Origin: Hypanus sabinus
Taxonomy: Eukaryota
DNA length: 64,000 nucleotides
Assembly (NCBI RefSeq): GCF_030144855.1
Contig: NC_082734.1
Coordinates: forward strand, 30,752,001 to 30,816,000
Direction of reading: 5' to 3'
The translations under genes and the position numbers were made by a program. A model generated the notes under the pieces. That model was not told the DNA's origin. It was given only the letters and a program-made list of their open reading frames with translations, and made no database searches. Positions 10,472-18,883 of this stretch are shown piece by piece. Position 1 is the first letter of the stretch; every line of letters starts with the position of its first letter.

Positions 10472-10834
10472 ATGCCTGAAACCAAAGCTCCGAAGAAAGG
10501 CGCCAAGAAAGCCGTGTCCAAGGCCAAGGGCACCAAGAGGCGCAGGAGGTCGAGGAGGGAGAGTTACTCCATCTACGTCTACAAGGTGATGAAGCAGGTT
10601 CACCCCGACACCGGCATCTCCTCCAAGGCCATGAGCGTCATGAACTCGTTCGTGAACGATATTTTCGAGCGCATCGCGCGCGAGGCTTCCCGCCTGGCCC
10701 ATTACAACAAGCGGTCGANNNNNNNNNNNNNNNNNNNNNNNNNNNNNNNNNNNNNNNNNNNNNNNNNNNNNNNNNNNNNNNNNNNNNNNNNNNNNNNNNN
10801 NNNNNNNNNNNNNNNNNNNNNNNNNNNNNNNNNN
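10472..10834 (+). CDS. H2B: Histone H2B variant, copy 1 (3' part masked; end inferred)
   Basis: MPETKAPKK...[25 protein letters not shown]...HYNKRS; end assumes the canonical 38 further residues plus stop inside the N run. Confidence 0.85.
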
Positions 10835-10849
10835 NNNNNNNNNNNNNNN
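10719..10849. other. 131-nt N run over the H2B 3' end
   Basis: Directly visible; same length and same flanks as 17122-17252. Confidence 0.98.
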
Positions 10850-10865
10850 ACAAACCGAAAACTTC

Positions 10866-10881
10866 GGCTCTTTTAAGAGCC
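10866..10881 (+). terminator. Histone 3' stem-loop (H2B copy 1)
   Basis: GGCTCTTTTAAGAGCC followed by HDE-like GAAAGAGTTG. Confidence 0.92.
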
Positions 10882-12093
10882 ACTCACTCCATCGCTGAAA
10901 GAGTTGCTCCAGTATTTCAGCAGTGATTAATAACTAACCTTTCCTTGCAGATTTTCAGTTTAGAAATAATTATTGTTTATTGCAATCCGTATGTCCGTTT
11001 TAACCCCGGACTCGCTCTCACTACCCTGTGTCCTGTCACGGAGCATTTTCCCCTTTTGTTATCGACTTGTTTCCGACTTCAGACATGCACACACACAACT
11101 ATATACAAAGTGCATCGTTGTGAGGCAGATACTTGCTGTTACTGATTCGCTTTATCACCAACAGTTCCCTGTGCTGGAACTGTCCTGCGTCTTATTTGTA
11201 CTTGTGATTCAGTATAGATTCACCGTTTTTTCACATTGCAGTCTCGGCCTCCATCGTGAACTGCGAACCGTCCATAGCCGGATGCGTTTCAAATTAAAAC
11301 AAAATCCTGTCGTGTTCTGATTCCGTATTTGTACCGATCGATGATTAAAATGAAAATTTAATTCACAGTCACTCATATCGGAATACTAACTTTCGGTGAC
11401 ACTGCTGGTGAATGTAATTGTAATTAATGTGAATTAATTGCTTGTTTGTGGGTTCTTTTAGGGGGTTATTAACCCGATTTATCGTCTTTTGCGCATTGGT
11501 TGTGGTCAGTCTTTATTGGGTGGTTTATGAGCTTTTTTGTGGGTTCCTGAAAGAAGAATTTCAAGACTGTGTATAGTGTACAAAATTTGGTCATTTTACT
11601 TTGAAACATTACTGTGCTCTCAGGAAAGTGAAGTTCCGGCTTGAAAGTGGTGACACGGGTGTACTCTGATTATAAATTTTACTTTGAACTGTAAACTAAA
11701 TTCACACAGTATAAGTGGATCAGGATCATGGTGTCTTTCTCACAGGCATATGTACATAAAAGTTTATGTTTGGACTGTTAAATAAAGTTATTTTTCTCCT
11801 GGCTGACTTCACAAATTTCAATTTTATTTGTTTTTGTAATTATTTGTGCCATTTTCCTCTTGCACATTGGTTGGTCGTCGGTCTTTGCTAAGCGTGTTTT
11901 ATTCCTGGATTCAATTGTCTTTGTTTTGCGGGTTTCTGCAAAAAGAATTTCACGGCTGCACATTCTCTACACAGTTTGATAATTTTACTTTGAACATTAG
12001 ACTTAATTCGCGCAGTTTATTAAAAACGGATCAGGATCATGTGGCCCCATTCACAAACATAATATAAATACACACACAAACTTTCGGACGGTT

Positions 12094-12310
12094 CTATAAA
12101 ATTATCTTTCTCTTCGCGGACGTTACAGCTTTCACAATTTTAGTGGTCTGGCCGTTAGTTTTGGCGCTTCTCCTATTGCCTGTTCATTGGCGAATAAGGA
12201 CGCTCTCCAATCGGGCATTTCCTCTCAGAACTGGGAAATCCCTAATGAGATTAGGCAATTTACCGCCAATCAAGCACCGCTCTGCAGTCATCCAAGAGGT
12301 AGAAAAACAT
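12094..12310 (+). promoter_or_regulatory. Inverted H2A-promoter relic, unit B
   Basis: Homologous to 563-780; retains TCATTGG and CCGCCAATC. Confidence 0.65.
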
Positions 12311-12489
12311 TAATTCTCGGTAAAATACGGGACTAGAACGGAGGCCAGGTTCAGAGAGAGCGCTGTATGCAGAATAATACTATTTTCAGGGAAGGAAACG
12401 CGCTTCAGAGTTTAATACGCTACGAATGGAGCGCAGATCGAAAAAAGCTGGAGTCACCCCCATCACCCCTTTCCGCAGACAATATGGGT

Positions 12490-12505
12490 GGCTCTGAAAA
12501 GAGCC
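12490..12505 (-). terminator. Histone 3' stem-loop (H2A copy 2)
   Basis: Minus strand GGCTCTTTTCAGAGCC followed by ACCCA. Confidence 0.93.
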
Positions 12506-12535
12506 TTTGGGTCTTTTAACTGACGTTTCACTTGT

Positions 12536-12928
12536 TTATTTGCCCTTGGGGTTGGCGGGTCCGCCGGATTTCTTGGGCAAAAGCACGGCCTGGATATTGG
12601 GCAGTACCCCGCCCTGAGCGATGGTCACCCCTCCCAGCAGCTTGTTGAGCTCCTCGTCGTTGCGGACGGCCAGCTGCAGGTGTCTGGGGATGATGCGGGT
12701 CTTCTTGTTGTCTCGGGCCGCGTTGCCGGCCAACTCGAGGATTTCAGCCGTCAGGTACTCGAGTACAGCAGCCAGGTAGACTGGGGCTCCGGCACCCACC
12801 CGCTCAGCATAATTACCCTTTCTCAGGTGCCTGTGAACACGGCCCACCGGGAACTGCAGTCCGGCCCGAGACGAGCGAGACTTGGGCTTGCTCTTAGCCT
12901 TACCACCGGTTTTCCCTCGTCCACTCAT
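12536..12928 (-). CDS. H2A: Histone H2A, copy 2 (130 aa, intact)
   Basis: MSGRGKTGG...AGLQFPVGR...[15 protein letters not shown]; TATA box and stem-loop present. Confidence 0.95.
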
Positions 12929-12974
12929 TTTCACAGACTCCTAATCAGAGAATGAGAAAATTGTTCCGCATTCG

Positions 12975-16874: not shown

Positions 16875-17237
16875 ATGCCTGAAACCAAAGCTCCGAAGAA
16901 AGGCGCCAAGAAAGCCGTGTCCAAGGCCAAGGGCACCAAGAGGCGCAGGAGGTCGAGGAGGGAGAGTTACTCCATCTACGTCTACAAGGTGATGAAGCAG
17001 GTTCACCCCGACACCGGCATCTCCTCCAAGGCCATGGGCGTCATGAACTCGTTCGTGAACGATATTTTCGAGCGCATCGCGCGCGAGGCTTCCCGCCTGG
17101 CCCATTACAACAAGCGGTCGANNNNNNNNNNNNNNNNNNNNNNNNNNNNNNNNNNNNNNNNNNNNNNNNNNNNNNNNNNNNNNNNNNNNNNNNNNNNNNN
17201 NNNNNNNNNNNNNNNNNNNNNNNNNNNNNNNNNNNNN
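16875..17237 (+). CDS. H2B: Histone H2B variant, copy 2 (3' part masked; end inferred)
   Basis: Visible part matches copy 1 except KAMG versus KAMS; octamer variant ATTAGCAT at 16789-16796. Confidence 0.85.
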
Positions 17238-17252
17238 NNNNNNNNNNNNNNN
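17122..17252. other. 131-nt N run over the H2B 3' end
   Basis: Directly visible. Confidence 0.98.
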
Positions 17253-17268
17253 ACAAACCGAAAACAAC

Positions 17269-17284
17269 GGCTCTTTTAAGAGCC
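17269..17284 (+). terminator. Histone 3' stem-loop (H2B copy 2)
   Basis: GGCTCTTTTAAGAGCC, then GGAAGAGTTG. Confidence 0.92.
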
Positions 17285-18077
17285 ACTCACACTTTCCATG
17301 GAAGAGTTGCTCCAGTATTTCAGCAGTGATTAATAACTAACCTTTCCTTACAGATTTTCAGTCTAGGAATAATTATTGTTTATTGCGATCCGTATGTCCG
17401 TTTTAATCCCGGACTCGCTCTTACTACCCTATGTACCGTCACGGAGCATTTTCCCCTTTTGTTATCGGCTTGTTTCCGTCTTCAGTCATGCACACACACA
17501 ACTATATACAAAGTGCATCGTTGTGAGGCAGATACTTGCTGTTACTGATTCACTTTATCACCAACAGTTCCCTGTGCTGGAACTGTCCTGCGTCTTATTT
17601 GTACTTGTGATTTAGTATATGTTCACGGTTTTTTGACATTGCAGTGTCGGCCTCGATCGTAACTTATGAACTGCGAACCGTCCATAACCGGATGCGTTTC
17701 AAATTAAAACAAAATCCTGTCATGTTCTGATTCCGTATTTGTACCGATCGATGATTAAAATGAAAATTTAATTCACAGTCACTCCCATATCGGAATGTAA
17801 CTAGTTTAAGGTGACTTTGCGGGTTGTGATCTATTAATTATTTGCGTCATTTGTCCTCTTGAATCGGTCTTTGTTAAGCGTGGTTTGTCGTGGATTCAAT
17901 TGACTGTTTTGTGGGTTTCTGCAAGAAGAATTTCAAGGCTGTATATTTGTCTACAGTTTGATAATTTTACTTTGAACATTAAATTTAATTCACGCAGTCT
18001 ATTATAAATGGATCAGGATATCTGACCCCATTCACAAACCGTATAATATAAATACACACACACTGTTTCGGAATGTT

Positions 18078-18295
18078 CTATAAAATTATCTTTCTCTTGA
18101 CGGACTTTACAAATTTCACAGTTCTTGTGGTTTGGTCGTTAGTTTTGGCGCTTACCCTGTTGCCTGGTCGTTGGTGAATAAGGACGCTCTCTGATCGGGC
18201 ATTTCCTCTGAGAATTATGAAACCCCTAATGAGATTAGGCAATTTACCGCCAATGAAGCTCCACTCTCCAGTCATCCAAAAGATAGCAGAAAATA
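18078..18295 (+). promoter_or_regulatory. Inverted H2A-promoter relic, unit C
   Basis: Homologous to 563-780 and 12094-12310. Confidence 0.6.
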
Positions 18296-18444
18296 AAATT
18301 ACTGATTTTCGGTAAAATTGGGTACTGCGCAAATAAATGTAGTTATTTTCTGGGGGAGGAAAAGCACTTTAGCCTGAGACTTTAATACGGAAACACCCGG
18401 AGTCACCCCAGTCTGTATCAGCCCTTTTCTTAGACAATATGGGT

Positions 18445-18460
18445 GGCTCTGAAAAGAGCC
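18445..18460 (-). terminator. Histone 3' stem-loop (H2A copy 3)
   Basis: Minus strand GGCTCTTTTCAGAGCC, HDE-like AGAAAAGGGCTG. Confidence 0.93.
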
Positions 18461-18490
18461 TTTGGGTCTTTTAACTGACGTTTCACTTGT

Positions 18491-18883
18491 TTATTTGCCC
18501 TTGGGGTTGGTGGATCCGCCGGATTTCTTGGGCAAAAGCACGGCCTGGATATTGGGCAGTACCCCGCCCTGAGCGATGGTCACCCCTCCCAGCAGCTTGT
18601 TGAGCTCCTCGTCGTTGCGGACGGCCAGCTGCAGGTGTCTGGGGATGATGCGGGTCTTCTTGTTGTCTCGGGCCGCGTTGCCGGCCAACTCGAGGATTTC
18701 AGCCGTCAGGTACTCGAGTACAGCAGCCAGGTAGACTGGGGCTCCGGCACCCACCCGATCGGCGTAATTACCCTTTCTCAGGTGCCTGTGAACACGGCCC
18801 ACCGGGAACTGCAGTCCGGCCCGAGACGAGCGAGACTTGGGCTTGCTCTTAGCCTTACCACCGGTTTTCCCTCGTCCACTCAT
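18491..18883 (-). CDS. H2A: Histone H2A, copy 3 (130 aa, intact)
   Basis: As copy 2 but NYADRV and [12 protein letters not shown]. Confidence 0.95.

What the first reader, a model, noticed from the sequence alone, without database searches (positions are those of the whole stretch)
10472..18883. Separately amplified cassette of a variant H2A/H2B pair (short Arg-rich H2B with G75R; H2A with altered tails)
Seen: the H2B N-tail is [31 protein letters not shown] (predicted 120 aa versus 126 canonical), and the strongly conserved IAGEASRL reads IAREASRL in both copies. H2A has [16 protein letters not shown] (His as in H2A.Z HRHLK) and a C-tail KKSGG(PA/ST)NPKGK without SQEY. All genes keep stem-loops, and the repeat unit carries no H3, H4 or H1. 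Established: H2B 75-76 lies by the H2B-H4 four-helix interface, and Arg-rich H2B tails typify germ-line variants. Inference: a co-evolved, lineage-specific H2A-H2B dimer (possibly testis or early embryo) that alters nucleosome stability.
Basis: partly seen in the sequence, partly recalled or inferred. Interest (0 to 1): 0.7.

Follow-up and report, generated by a model that had tools for sequence, protein, structure and literature searches.

The report
Stingray histone H2A/H2B isoform gene pairs
These are repeated pairs of ordinary-type (S-phase, stem-loop) histone H2B and H2A genes of the Atlantic stingray; the H2A is an old shark-and-ray form, the H2B is a stingray-family form with one unusual arginine, and nothing yet shows a sperm, egg or embryo role.

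Summary
The window (Hypanus sabinus, chromosome record CM058002.1) carries convergent H2B→ ←H2A pairs: two intact pairs, plus a third H2A that is a pseudogene with a stop at codon 4.

**N runs.** Both are deliberate 131-letter masks in register, not gaps. The frame stays open through the copy-2 mask and gives 120 codons.

**Interpretation: only partly supported.**
- HRHLRK is common in shark and teleost H2A, and the protein matches canonical H2A/H2A.X, not H2A.Z.
- The [10 protein letters not shown] tail and the NPKGK C-tail occur in sawfish, devil rays and red stingray. The "KPKSRSS" H2A type is elasmobranch-wide.
- H2B residue 75 is not strongly conserved: G 85, S 14, A 9, R 6, T 2, N 1 among 120 relatives.
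- Arg75 is fixed in all nine 120-aa H2B sequences compared from Hypanus and Hemitrygon. It arose separately in horn shark paralogues.
- The pairs belong to a larger H3–H1–H2A–H2B cluster conserved in Hemitrygon.

**Reading.** These are replication-dependent isoform genes kept by selection and/or gene conversion. A germ-line or embryo role is possible but unsupported. The scan earlier noted another "all-variant" histone cluster elsewhere in this genome.

The parts
10341..10471 (+). H2B copy 1 proximal promoter and 5' UTR: CCAAT box, octamer-like ATTAGCAT (10386), TATA-like ATTTAAT
   Evidence: 96.9% identical to copy 2, while sequence further upstream is 72.8% identical. The motifs were read. 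The same motif order is kept in the Pristis H2B relics.
10472..10834 (+). H2B copy 1 coding sequence. It is visible to 10718; 10719-10849 is masked. The end at 10834 is inferred from copy 2.
   Evidence: ORF and translation. Pfam Histone, E=9.8e-18, on the visible 82 aa. The mask is in register with copy 2.
10861..10906 (+). H2B copy 1 3' stem-loop and downstream purine-rich element
   Evidence: RF00032 at 29.2 bits, below the gathering score of 34. The 16-nt stem-loop GGCTCTTTTAAGAGCC is intact.
12465..12510 (-). H2A copy 1 3' stem-loop
   Evidence: RF00032 at 39.5 bits.
12536..12928 (-). H2A copy 1, 130 aa (end includes the stop codon)
   Evidence: ORF. Pfam Histone plus Histone_H2A_C. The exact protein is in the public collection.
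12929..13090 (-). H2A copy 1 5' UTR and promoter (TATAAAAA and CCAAT boxes)
   Evidence: Read. Three copies aligned. 87.7% identical between units.
13100..16580 (.). Spacer between units: decayed retroelement sequence
   Evidence: RT-like ORF fragments. Related LINE ORFs elsewhere in the window hit RVT_1 and Exo_endo_phos.
16875..17237 (+). H2B copy 2 coding sequence, 120 codons; 17122-17252 is masked
   Evidence: Public gene call of 120 aa at this place. Frame and stop position confirmed. It differs from copy 1 at one visible codon, S55G.
17264..17309 (+). H2B copy 2 3' stem-loop
   Evidence: RF00032 at 38.0 bits.
18420..18465 (-). H2A copy 2 3' stem-loop
   Evidence: RF00032 at 42.7 bits.
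18491..18883 (-). H2A copy 2, 130 aa
   Evidence: ORF. Differs from copy 1 by 2 synonymous and 3 non-synonymous changes.
938..1401 (-). H2A copy 0: pseudogene with a weakened stem-loop. The left part of a third unit runs off the window start.
   Evidence: CGA to TGA at codon 4, plus A22S, V31D and G129D. Stem-loop GGTTCT..., RF00032 at 32.4 bits, below 34. Direct-repeat families D1-D5 and D8.
39610..40298 (+). Linker histone H1 gene of the same cluster, with stem-loop
   Evidence: Pfam Linker_histone, E=2.9e-14. RF00032 at 39.6 bits. Nearest relatives are Mobula H1 at 82-83% identity, on the chromosomes that hold the Mobula H2A orthologues.
41701..42181 (+). Canonical H3 (H3.2-type) gene with stem-loop
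   Evidence: Pfam Histone, E=8.2e-49. RF00032 at 35.7 bits. The exact protein sits in a 7027-member cluster.

Best explanation
The finding is a tandemly duplicated array of replication-dependent histone gene pairs, arranged tail to tail (H2B on the plus strand, H2A on the minus strand). It is part of a separate H3-H1-H2A-H2B cluster on one chromosome of the Atlantic stingray, and I saw no H4 in it.

**How each gene works (inferred from the anatomy).** Each gene has its own promoter. H2B has CCAAT, an octamer-like ATTAGCAT and a TATA-like box; H2A has CCAAT boxes and TATAAAA. Each gene ends in the histone stem-loop with a downstream purine-rich element. From established histone biology, the mRNAs should therefore be made in S phase and cut by SLBP and the U7 snRNP, without a poly(A) tail.

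**What the proteins are.** They are isoforms of canonical H2A and H2B, not members of a named variant class.
- The H2A belongs to an old elasmobranch 'KPKSRSS' isoform line.
- The H2B is a stingray-family 120-aa isoform with a 28-residue tail, I61V, and a fixed Gly75-to-Arg change next to Glu76, the residue that bonds H4 Arg92.

**How the copies are kept.** Purifying selection and/or gene conversion limited to coding sequence and core promoters keeps them alike. Single copies still decay.

**Most likely role (inferred).** The pairs supply part of the ordinary S-phase H2A-H2B pool. Arg75 would have at most a modest effect on the H2B-H4 contact.
For: **Gene type.**
- Histone folds.
- Stem-loops scored by Rfam.
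- Intact promoters, conserved between units at 96.9% while far flanks are 70-73% identical.
- H2A coding sequence is 98.7% and visible H2B coding sequence 99.6% identical between units, against 83-94% for the intergenic DNA.

**Cluster.**
- Two further H2A(130)/H2B(120) convergent units lie on the same chromosome. One of them has H1 and H3 in the same order as in the window.
- The same order is found in Hemitrygon.
- Mobula has H2A(130) with a convergent 121-aa H2B.

**H2A.**
- Near-identical H2A in Pristis, Mobula and Hemitrygon.
- The KPKSRSS type is also present in skates, Narcine, Heterodontus and Cetorhinus.
- The best solved-structure matches are canonical H2A and H2A.X.

**H2B.**
- Nine of nine Dasyatid 120-aa H2B sequences have Arg75 and form one clade with 94/93 support.
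- Position 75 tolerates G, S, A, T, N and R.
- Arg also occurs in horn shark paralogues whose siblings have Gly.
Against: - There is no expression data of any kind. S-phase expression and contribution to bulk chromatin are inferred from gene anatomy only.
- A cluster with its own H1, H2A and H2B subtypes is also what a stage-specific histone set would look like.
- Arg beside Glu76 is a large change at a contact known to matter (PMC10394151).
- I could not count all H2A and H2B genes of the species, so the share of this cluster is unknown.
- H2B copy 1's stem-loop region scores below Rfam's gathering score.
Confidence: 0.62

Rival explanations
1. Stage-specific histone set. The cluster, with its own H1, H2A and H2B subtypes, is switched on in the germ line or in early embryos. 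Arg75 and the short Arg-rich tail loosen or re-tune nucleosomes there, for example before histone removal in sperm or during rapid cleavage.
For: - The cluster has a distinct H1 subtype. It is 64-69% identical to the H1s of the other two clusters in the full alignment, and it is conserved in Mobula.
- Arg75 is fixed in two genera.
- Residue 76 next to it bonds H4 R92, and its mutation destabilises nucleosomes (PMC10394151).
- The tail is the shortest of the 81 compared and has the maximum Arg count.
- An earlier scan note describes another 'all-variant' histone cluster in this genome as a possible germ-line kit (s1-195638, untested here).
Against: - No expression evidence.
- The H2A core is fully canonical, and its tail is shared with rays whose partner H2B is dead (Pristis) or not read here (Mobula, 121 aa).
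- All genes keep the replication-type 3' end.
- The neighbouring H3 is plain H3.2.
- Arg count and residue 75 both fall within the variation seen among ordinary paralogues.
Confidence: 0.2
2. These are simply the main bulk H2A and H2B of stingrays (family Dasyatidae). The cluster would be one of the species' largest histone clusters, and the features are just the local 'canonical' sequence.
For: - Hemitrygon has at least six gene products of the 120-aa H2B, in two accession ranges on the orthologous chromosome.
- The Squalomix preprint reports that one of the largest red-stingray histone clusters holds H1/H2A/H2B/H3 genes. That is the same gene content as here, with no H4 named (10.1101/2025.06.08.657570).
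- Mobula has at least five H2A gene products of this type.
Against: - In H. sabinus the annotated set is small: consecutive accessions XP_059810069-78, about five pairs. Another chromosome (39.76 Mb) carries at least 13 H1 clusters and several 124-aa G75 H2B genes.
- The preprint's cluster lies among more than 300 tRNA genes, and this window has none.
- In the skate Amblyraja, the 126-aa H2A type has far more gene products than the 130-aa type.
Confidence: 0.12
3. A silent, decaying duplicate array: leftovers of a histone cluster that no longer contribute protein.
For: - One of the three H2A copies in the window has a nonsense codon, a near-neutral substitution pattern and a weakened stem-loop.
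- H2B copy 1's stem-loop flank scores below Rfam's gathering score.
- In Pristis both partner H2Bs are dead.
- The array is full of retroelement debris.
Against: - Four distinct intact H2A and at least five intact H2B gene products exist in the species.
- Coding sequence and core promoters are 97-99.6% identical between units, while flanks have drifted to 70-94%.
- The same protein forms are kept in Hemitrygon.
Confidence: 0.05

Closest known systems
Replication-dependent H2A/H2B isoform genes of vertebrate histone clusters (for example the 13 or more human or mouse somatic H2B isoforms; PMC4411797, PMC9526256)
   Same: Intronless genes with a stem-loop 3' end. They are clustered and repeated, differ from each other by a few residues mostly in the tails, and are homogenised within clusters.
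   Different: Arg at position 75. In the relatives compared here that position is G in 85 of 120, or S, A, T or N. The tail is the shortest seen, at 28 residues. The pairs are convergent rather than divergent around a shared promoter.
Oncohistone H2B E76K/Q (PMC10394151)
   Same: A gain of positive charge in H2B helix alpha2, at or beside the contact with H4 R92.
   Different: The change here is at residue 75, not 76, and Glu76 is kept. It is fixed in the germ line in many gene copies of two genera, so it is evidently tolerated. Its structural effect was not tested.
Horn shark (Heterodontus francisci) 126-aa H2B paralogues with IAREASRL
   Same: The same Gly-to-Arg replacement in an otherwise canonical replication-type H2B, with [10 protein letters not shown].
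   Different: They have a different N-tail (MVDEKKT...). Arg and Gly copies are intermixed within one starred horn-shark-only clade, so the origin is independent. The neighbours of the horn shark KPKSRSS-type H2A are an H4-sized gene and unnamed genes of H1-like length, not H2B.
H2A.Z
   Same: Only the His in HRHL(R)K.
   Different: The whole core is canonical. The best 60 solved-structure matches are canonical H2A, H2A.X or H2A.J. The gene has a stem-loop. HRHLRK is widespread in shark H2A and also occurs in teleost H2A.
Stage-specific histone gene sets such as sea-urchin early/late/cleavage-stage histones, or the small mammalian cluster with H2AW/H2BU1/H3.4 (from my own knowledge; RefSeq names these stingray genes 'late histone H2A.2.2-like' by best hit)
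   Same: A separate cluster with its own H1, H2A and H2B subtypes.
   Different: No timing or tissue data exist for the stingray genes. The RefSeq name reflects similarity only.

Membership tests
Replication-dependent (canonical-type) core histone genes | Uninterrupted ORF encoding a histone fold of the H2A or H2B type | tested here: met
   Pfam Histone and Histone_H2A_C for both H2A copies. Pfam Histone for the visible 82 aa of both H2B copies. The H2B frame is open through the copy-2 mask, giving 120 codons.
Replication-dependent (canonical-type) core histone genes | 3' stem-loop with a downstream purine-rich element instead of a poly(A) signal | tested here: met
   RF00032 at or above the gathering score for three of the four genes. 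The fourth, H2B copy 1, scores 29.2 bits but has an intact 16-nt stem-loop.
Replication-dependent (canonical-type) core histone genes | Location in a cluster with other histone genes | tested here: met
   H1 and H3.2 lie in the window. Further units are on the same chromosome.
Replication-dependent (canonical-type) core histone genes | S-phase-coupled, non-polyadenylated expression | not testable with these tools
H2A.Z | An H2A.Z-type core (own L1 loop, docking domain, extended acidic patch), so that H2A.Z chains are the closest relatives | tested here: not met
   The top 60 PDB sequence matches are canonical H2A, H2A.X or H2A.J, with no H2A.Z. The core is identical to other elasmobranch canonical H2A except for L/H at HR(L/H)LRK.
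H2A.X | C-terminal SQ(E/D)-hydrophobic motif | tested here: not met
   The C-tails end ...NPKGK.
Germ-line H2B variants (for example mammalian testis H2B or sea-urchin sperm H2B) | Germ-line restricted expression | not testable with these tools
Germ-line H2B variants (for example mammalian testis H2B or sea-urchin sperm H2B) | Tail clearly outside the range of somatic paralogues, for example repeated SPKK/SPRK motifs or a strong Arg excess | tested here: not met
   No SPKK-type repeats. The tail has 6 Arg, against 2-6 in 72 other H2Bs, 12 of which have 5 or more.

The most novel reading that the evidence does not exclude
Stingrays of the family Dasyatidae keep a dedicated histone cluster whose H2B carries a fixed Arg next to Glu76 at the H2B-H4 contact. 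Nucleosomes built with it would be intrinsically easier to open, and the cluster, with its own H1 and H2A subtypes, would be used at one life stage such as spermatogenesis or cleavage. The separate appearance of the same Arg in horn shark H2B paralogues would then point to a repeatedly selected way of tuning nucleosome stability through replication-type genes.
Probability: 0.15. Interest if true: 0.6.

Novelty: new member of a known kind. Interest (0 to 1): 0.3.

Why it matters
If the ordinary reading is right, the finding mainly documents how histone multigene families evolve in cartilaginous fishes:
- several clusters, each with its own H1, H2A and H2B isoforms;
- homogenised coding regions in drifting, retroelement-filled spacers;
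- occasional dead copies.

One point is worth a bench test. An arginine has been fixed in many gene copies beside H2B Glu76, a residue whose mutation destabilises human nucleosomes in cancer. It has also appeared separately in a shark. That gives a natural experiment on how much charge the H2B-H4 contact tolerates.

Tried and rejected
**Expression evidence.**
- The look-up of sequencing runs listed no run on record as RNA.
Rfam and tRNA scans were run beside them.

**Gene census for H. sabinus.**
- The word search lists only the 120 best hits.
- The look-up of encoding contigs gave no DNA for most large genomes.
- The last cluster look-up showed no further H. sabinus H2A. The share of this cluster in the species' H2A/H2B genes therefore stays open.

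**The 121-aa Mobula partner H2B.** Its sequence could not be fetched, so its residue 75 is unknown.

**Literature.** Searches for elasmobranch or stingray H2B variants and for H2B G75 found nothing relevant.

**Orthology to the red stingray chromosome 28 cluster.** This could not be settled. The window has no tRNA genes, and the preprint text gives no chromosome 28 length or accession to match.

**Rejected readings.**
- An H2A.Z relationship.
- An assembly-gap reading of the N runs.
- A 'divergent H1': its globular domain follows the general cartilaginous-fish H1 pattern.

**Not done on purpose.** The masked H2B letters were not read, filled or inferred. From the unmasked public locus L001 I took only the length match and the position of the first in-frame stop.

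
Full report
**Where we are**

The exact H2A proteins of the window are in the public collection. They map to Hypanus sabinus (Atlantic stingray), assembly GCA_030144855.1, record CM058002.1 (42.86 Mb), near 30.77 Mb. RefSeq names them 'late histone H2A.2.2-like' and names the partner H2B 'histone H2B 5-like/7-like'. These names come from best hits, not from tests.

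**The N runs, tested first**

Both runs (10719-10849 and 17122-17252) begin 247 nt after the H2B ATG and are 131 nt long. Two independent assembly gaps would not do that.

The public record of the copy-2 locus (L001) is identical to window 15491-21883 at all unmasked positions, with the same offset on both sides. So the run hides exactly 131 real letters. The H2B frame stays open through it, and the first in-frame stop begins at 17235, giving 120 codons. I computed positions only. No masked letter was printed, filled or used, and all H2B comparisons below use only the visible 82 residues.

**Anatomy**

The unit is a convergent pair: H2B on the plus strand and H2A on the minus strand, with their 3' ends 1.25 to 1.7 kb apart.

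- The window holds two intact pairs: H2B 10472.. with H2A 12536-12928, and H2B 16875-17237 with H2A 18491-18883.
- At its left edge is the H2A side of a third unit. That H2A (1009-1401) is a pseudogene. It has CGA to TGA at codon 4, three missense against four silent changes, and a G-U weakened stem-loop that falls below Rfam's gathering score.
- Unit spacing is 11.5 kb and about 6 kb. The difference is retroelement sequence.
- Rfam's histone stem-loop model finds both H2A 3' ends, H2B copy 2, H1 and H3 above the gathering score. H2B copy 1 scores 29.2 bits because its flanks differ, but its 16-nt stem-loop is intact.
- H2B promoters carry CCAAT, an octamer-like ATTAGCAT and ATTTAAT. They are 96.9% identical over the last 131 nt before the ATG in the two copies.
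- H2A promoters carry CCAAT boxes and TATAAAAA.

**Conservation between units**

| Segment | Identity between units |
|---|---|
| Visible H2B coding sequence | 99.6% |
| H2A coding sequence | 98.7% |
| H2B core promoter | 96.9% |
| Intergenic DNA | 83-94% |
| DNA outside the unit | 70-73% |

So the genes are kept alike by purifying selection, gene conversion, or both, as in other histone multigene families.

**The unit is part of a bigger cluster**

- H1 (39610-40233) and a plain H3.2 (41701-42111), both with stem-loops, lie about 21 kb from H2A copy 2. No H4 is in the window.
- Two more H2A(130)/H2B(120) convergent units lie on the same chromosome. One of them has H1 and H3 8.5 kb from H2A, in the same order and orientation as in the window.
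- The red stingray Hemitrygon akajei has the same H3-H1-H2A-H2B order.
- Both Mobula species have H2A(130) with a convergent 121-aa H2B.
- The window's H1 is closest (82-83%) to Mobula H1s on those same chromosomes.
- In the sawfish Pristis, the orthologous H2A is intact, but the two H2B genes beside it are dead. They keep Gly75 and the same promoter motifs.

The statement 'the repeat unit carries no H3, H4 or H1' is therefore true for the 6-kb unit but not for the cluster.

**H2A**

- The tails [10 protein letters not shown] and (S/T)GG..NPK(G/S)K are shared with Hemitrygon, Mobula and Pristis. Narcine has a closely related form.
- A 128-130-aa 'KPKSRSS' H2A type also exists in skates, horn shark and basking shark. 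It sits beside a 126-aa 'KAKSRSS...KKTGGASK' type, which in the skate Amblyraja has many more gene products and which H. sabinus also has on another chromosome.
- HRHLRK is the usual state in sharks and occurs in a teleost H2A. Within this ray lineage H and L alternate between paralogues.
- The best 60 solved-structure matches are canonical H2A, H2A.X and H2A.J, with no H2A.Z.

The H2A is an old elasmobranch isoform. It is not an H2A.Z-like or co-evolved protein.

**H2B**

- The 120-aa form is found in H. sabinus (five further accessions, XP_059810074-78) and in Hemitrygon (at least six accessions). All nine sequences compared, the two window copies included, read IAREASRL.
- They form one clade with 94/93 support.
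- Other H. sabinus H2Bs are 124 aa long with Gly75 and lie on other chromosomes.
- Position 75 is not strongly conserved. Among the 120 best relatives it is G 85, S 14, A 9, R 6, T 2, N 1, with three sequences that did not match the motif.
- Arg also occurs in horn shark paralogues nested among Gly siblings inside a well-supported horn-shark-only clade. Arg therefore arose at least twice.
- The N-tail, at 28 residues, is the shortest of the 81 compared. Its six Arg are the top of a 2-6 range that 12 other H2Bs nearly or fully reach.
- Glu76, which hydrogen-bonds H4 Arg92 and whose mutation destabilises nucleosomes (PMC10394151), is retained.
- Whether the Arg75 side chain points at H4 or into solvent I could not compute. 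The tolerance of S, A, T and N at this site suggests a peripheral position; this is inference.

**Expression**

None could be obtained. No transcript assembly in the protein collection carries these exact proteins.

**Verdict**

The best reading (about 0.6) is a set of ordinary replication-type isoform genes from one of several stingray histone clusters, with one unusual fixed residue in H2B. A germ-line or embryo set (about 0.2), the main bulk form (about 0.12) and a silent array (about 0.05) remain possible.

I found no paper describing these isoforms. A preprint notes a large H1/H2A/H2B/H3 cluster on red stingray chromosome 28, whose relation to this one is open.

The scan noted another 'all-variant' histone cluster elsewhere in this genome (s1-195638). 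I did not test it.

Noticed in passing
window 938-1401 (-): A third H2A copy is a pseudogene. It has CGA to TGA at codon 4, plus A22S, V31D and G129D against four silent changes. Its stem-loop is changed to GGTTCT... and scores below Rfam's gathering score.
   Followed up: yes
window 39610-40298 (+) and 41701-42181 (+): An H1 gene and a plain H3.2 gene, both with stem-loops. The same H3-H1-H2A-H2B order recurs at another unit on this chromosome and in Hemitrygon. The H1 is 82-83% identical to Mobula H1s, but in the full alignment only 64-69% identical to the H1s of the other two H. sabinus clusters. The exact H1 sequences I submitted for look-up began two or three codons before the ATG at 39610 and were not in the public protein collection.
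   Followed up: partly
L002 (Pristis pectinata CM019884.1) about 8700-9170 (+) and 11560-12000 (-): The sawfish orthologue of the H2A is intact, but it is flanked by two decayed H2B genes with stops and frameshifts. They keep Gly75, the stem-loop and the CCAAT / ATTAGCAT / ATTTAAT promoter order.
   Followed up: partly
window 10386 and 16789 (+); L002 8647: The H2B promoters carry ATTAGCAT where vertebrate H2B promoters usually have the octamer ATTTGCAT (the usual form is from my own knowledge). The variant is identical in both window copies and present in a Pristis H2B relic. Whether all ray H2B promoters have it was not checked.
   Followed up: partly
protein P0021 (Mobula hypostoma, 182 aa): The annotated N-terminal extension of this H2A reads like a translated, decayed H2B (…FKRIGGGASKPDHYKK…). 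This suggests a dead H2B upstream of the H2A on the same strand, as in Pristis.
   Followed up: no
proteins P0155, P0164, P0171, P0231, P0209 (Heterodontus francisci): Horn shark H2B paralogues with IAREASRL sit among near-identical siblings with IAGEASRL. The same Gly-to-Arg change has therefore recurred or spread within that cluster.
   Followed up: partly
window 12149-12180 and 13097-13128: A weak 32-nt inverted repeat (78% complementary) brackets H2A copy 1. One arm lies just upstream of the H2A promoter. This is probably what another note on this window (s1-181561) calls an inverted promoter copy.
   Followed up: partly
window 54636-55829 (-): An intact 397-aa ORF made of 13 C2H2 zinc fingers, with no KRAB or other N-terminal domain within the ORF.
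   Followed up: no
window 5149-9002, 31857-35442, 37232-38680, 58032-59729: Several LINE-type retroelement copies with endonuclease and reverse-transcriptase ORFs. The one at 5.1-9.0 kb accounts for the longer spacing between the first two histone units.
   Followed up: partly
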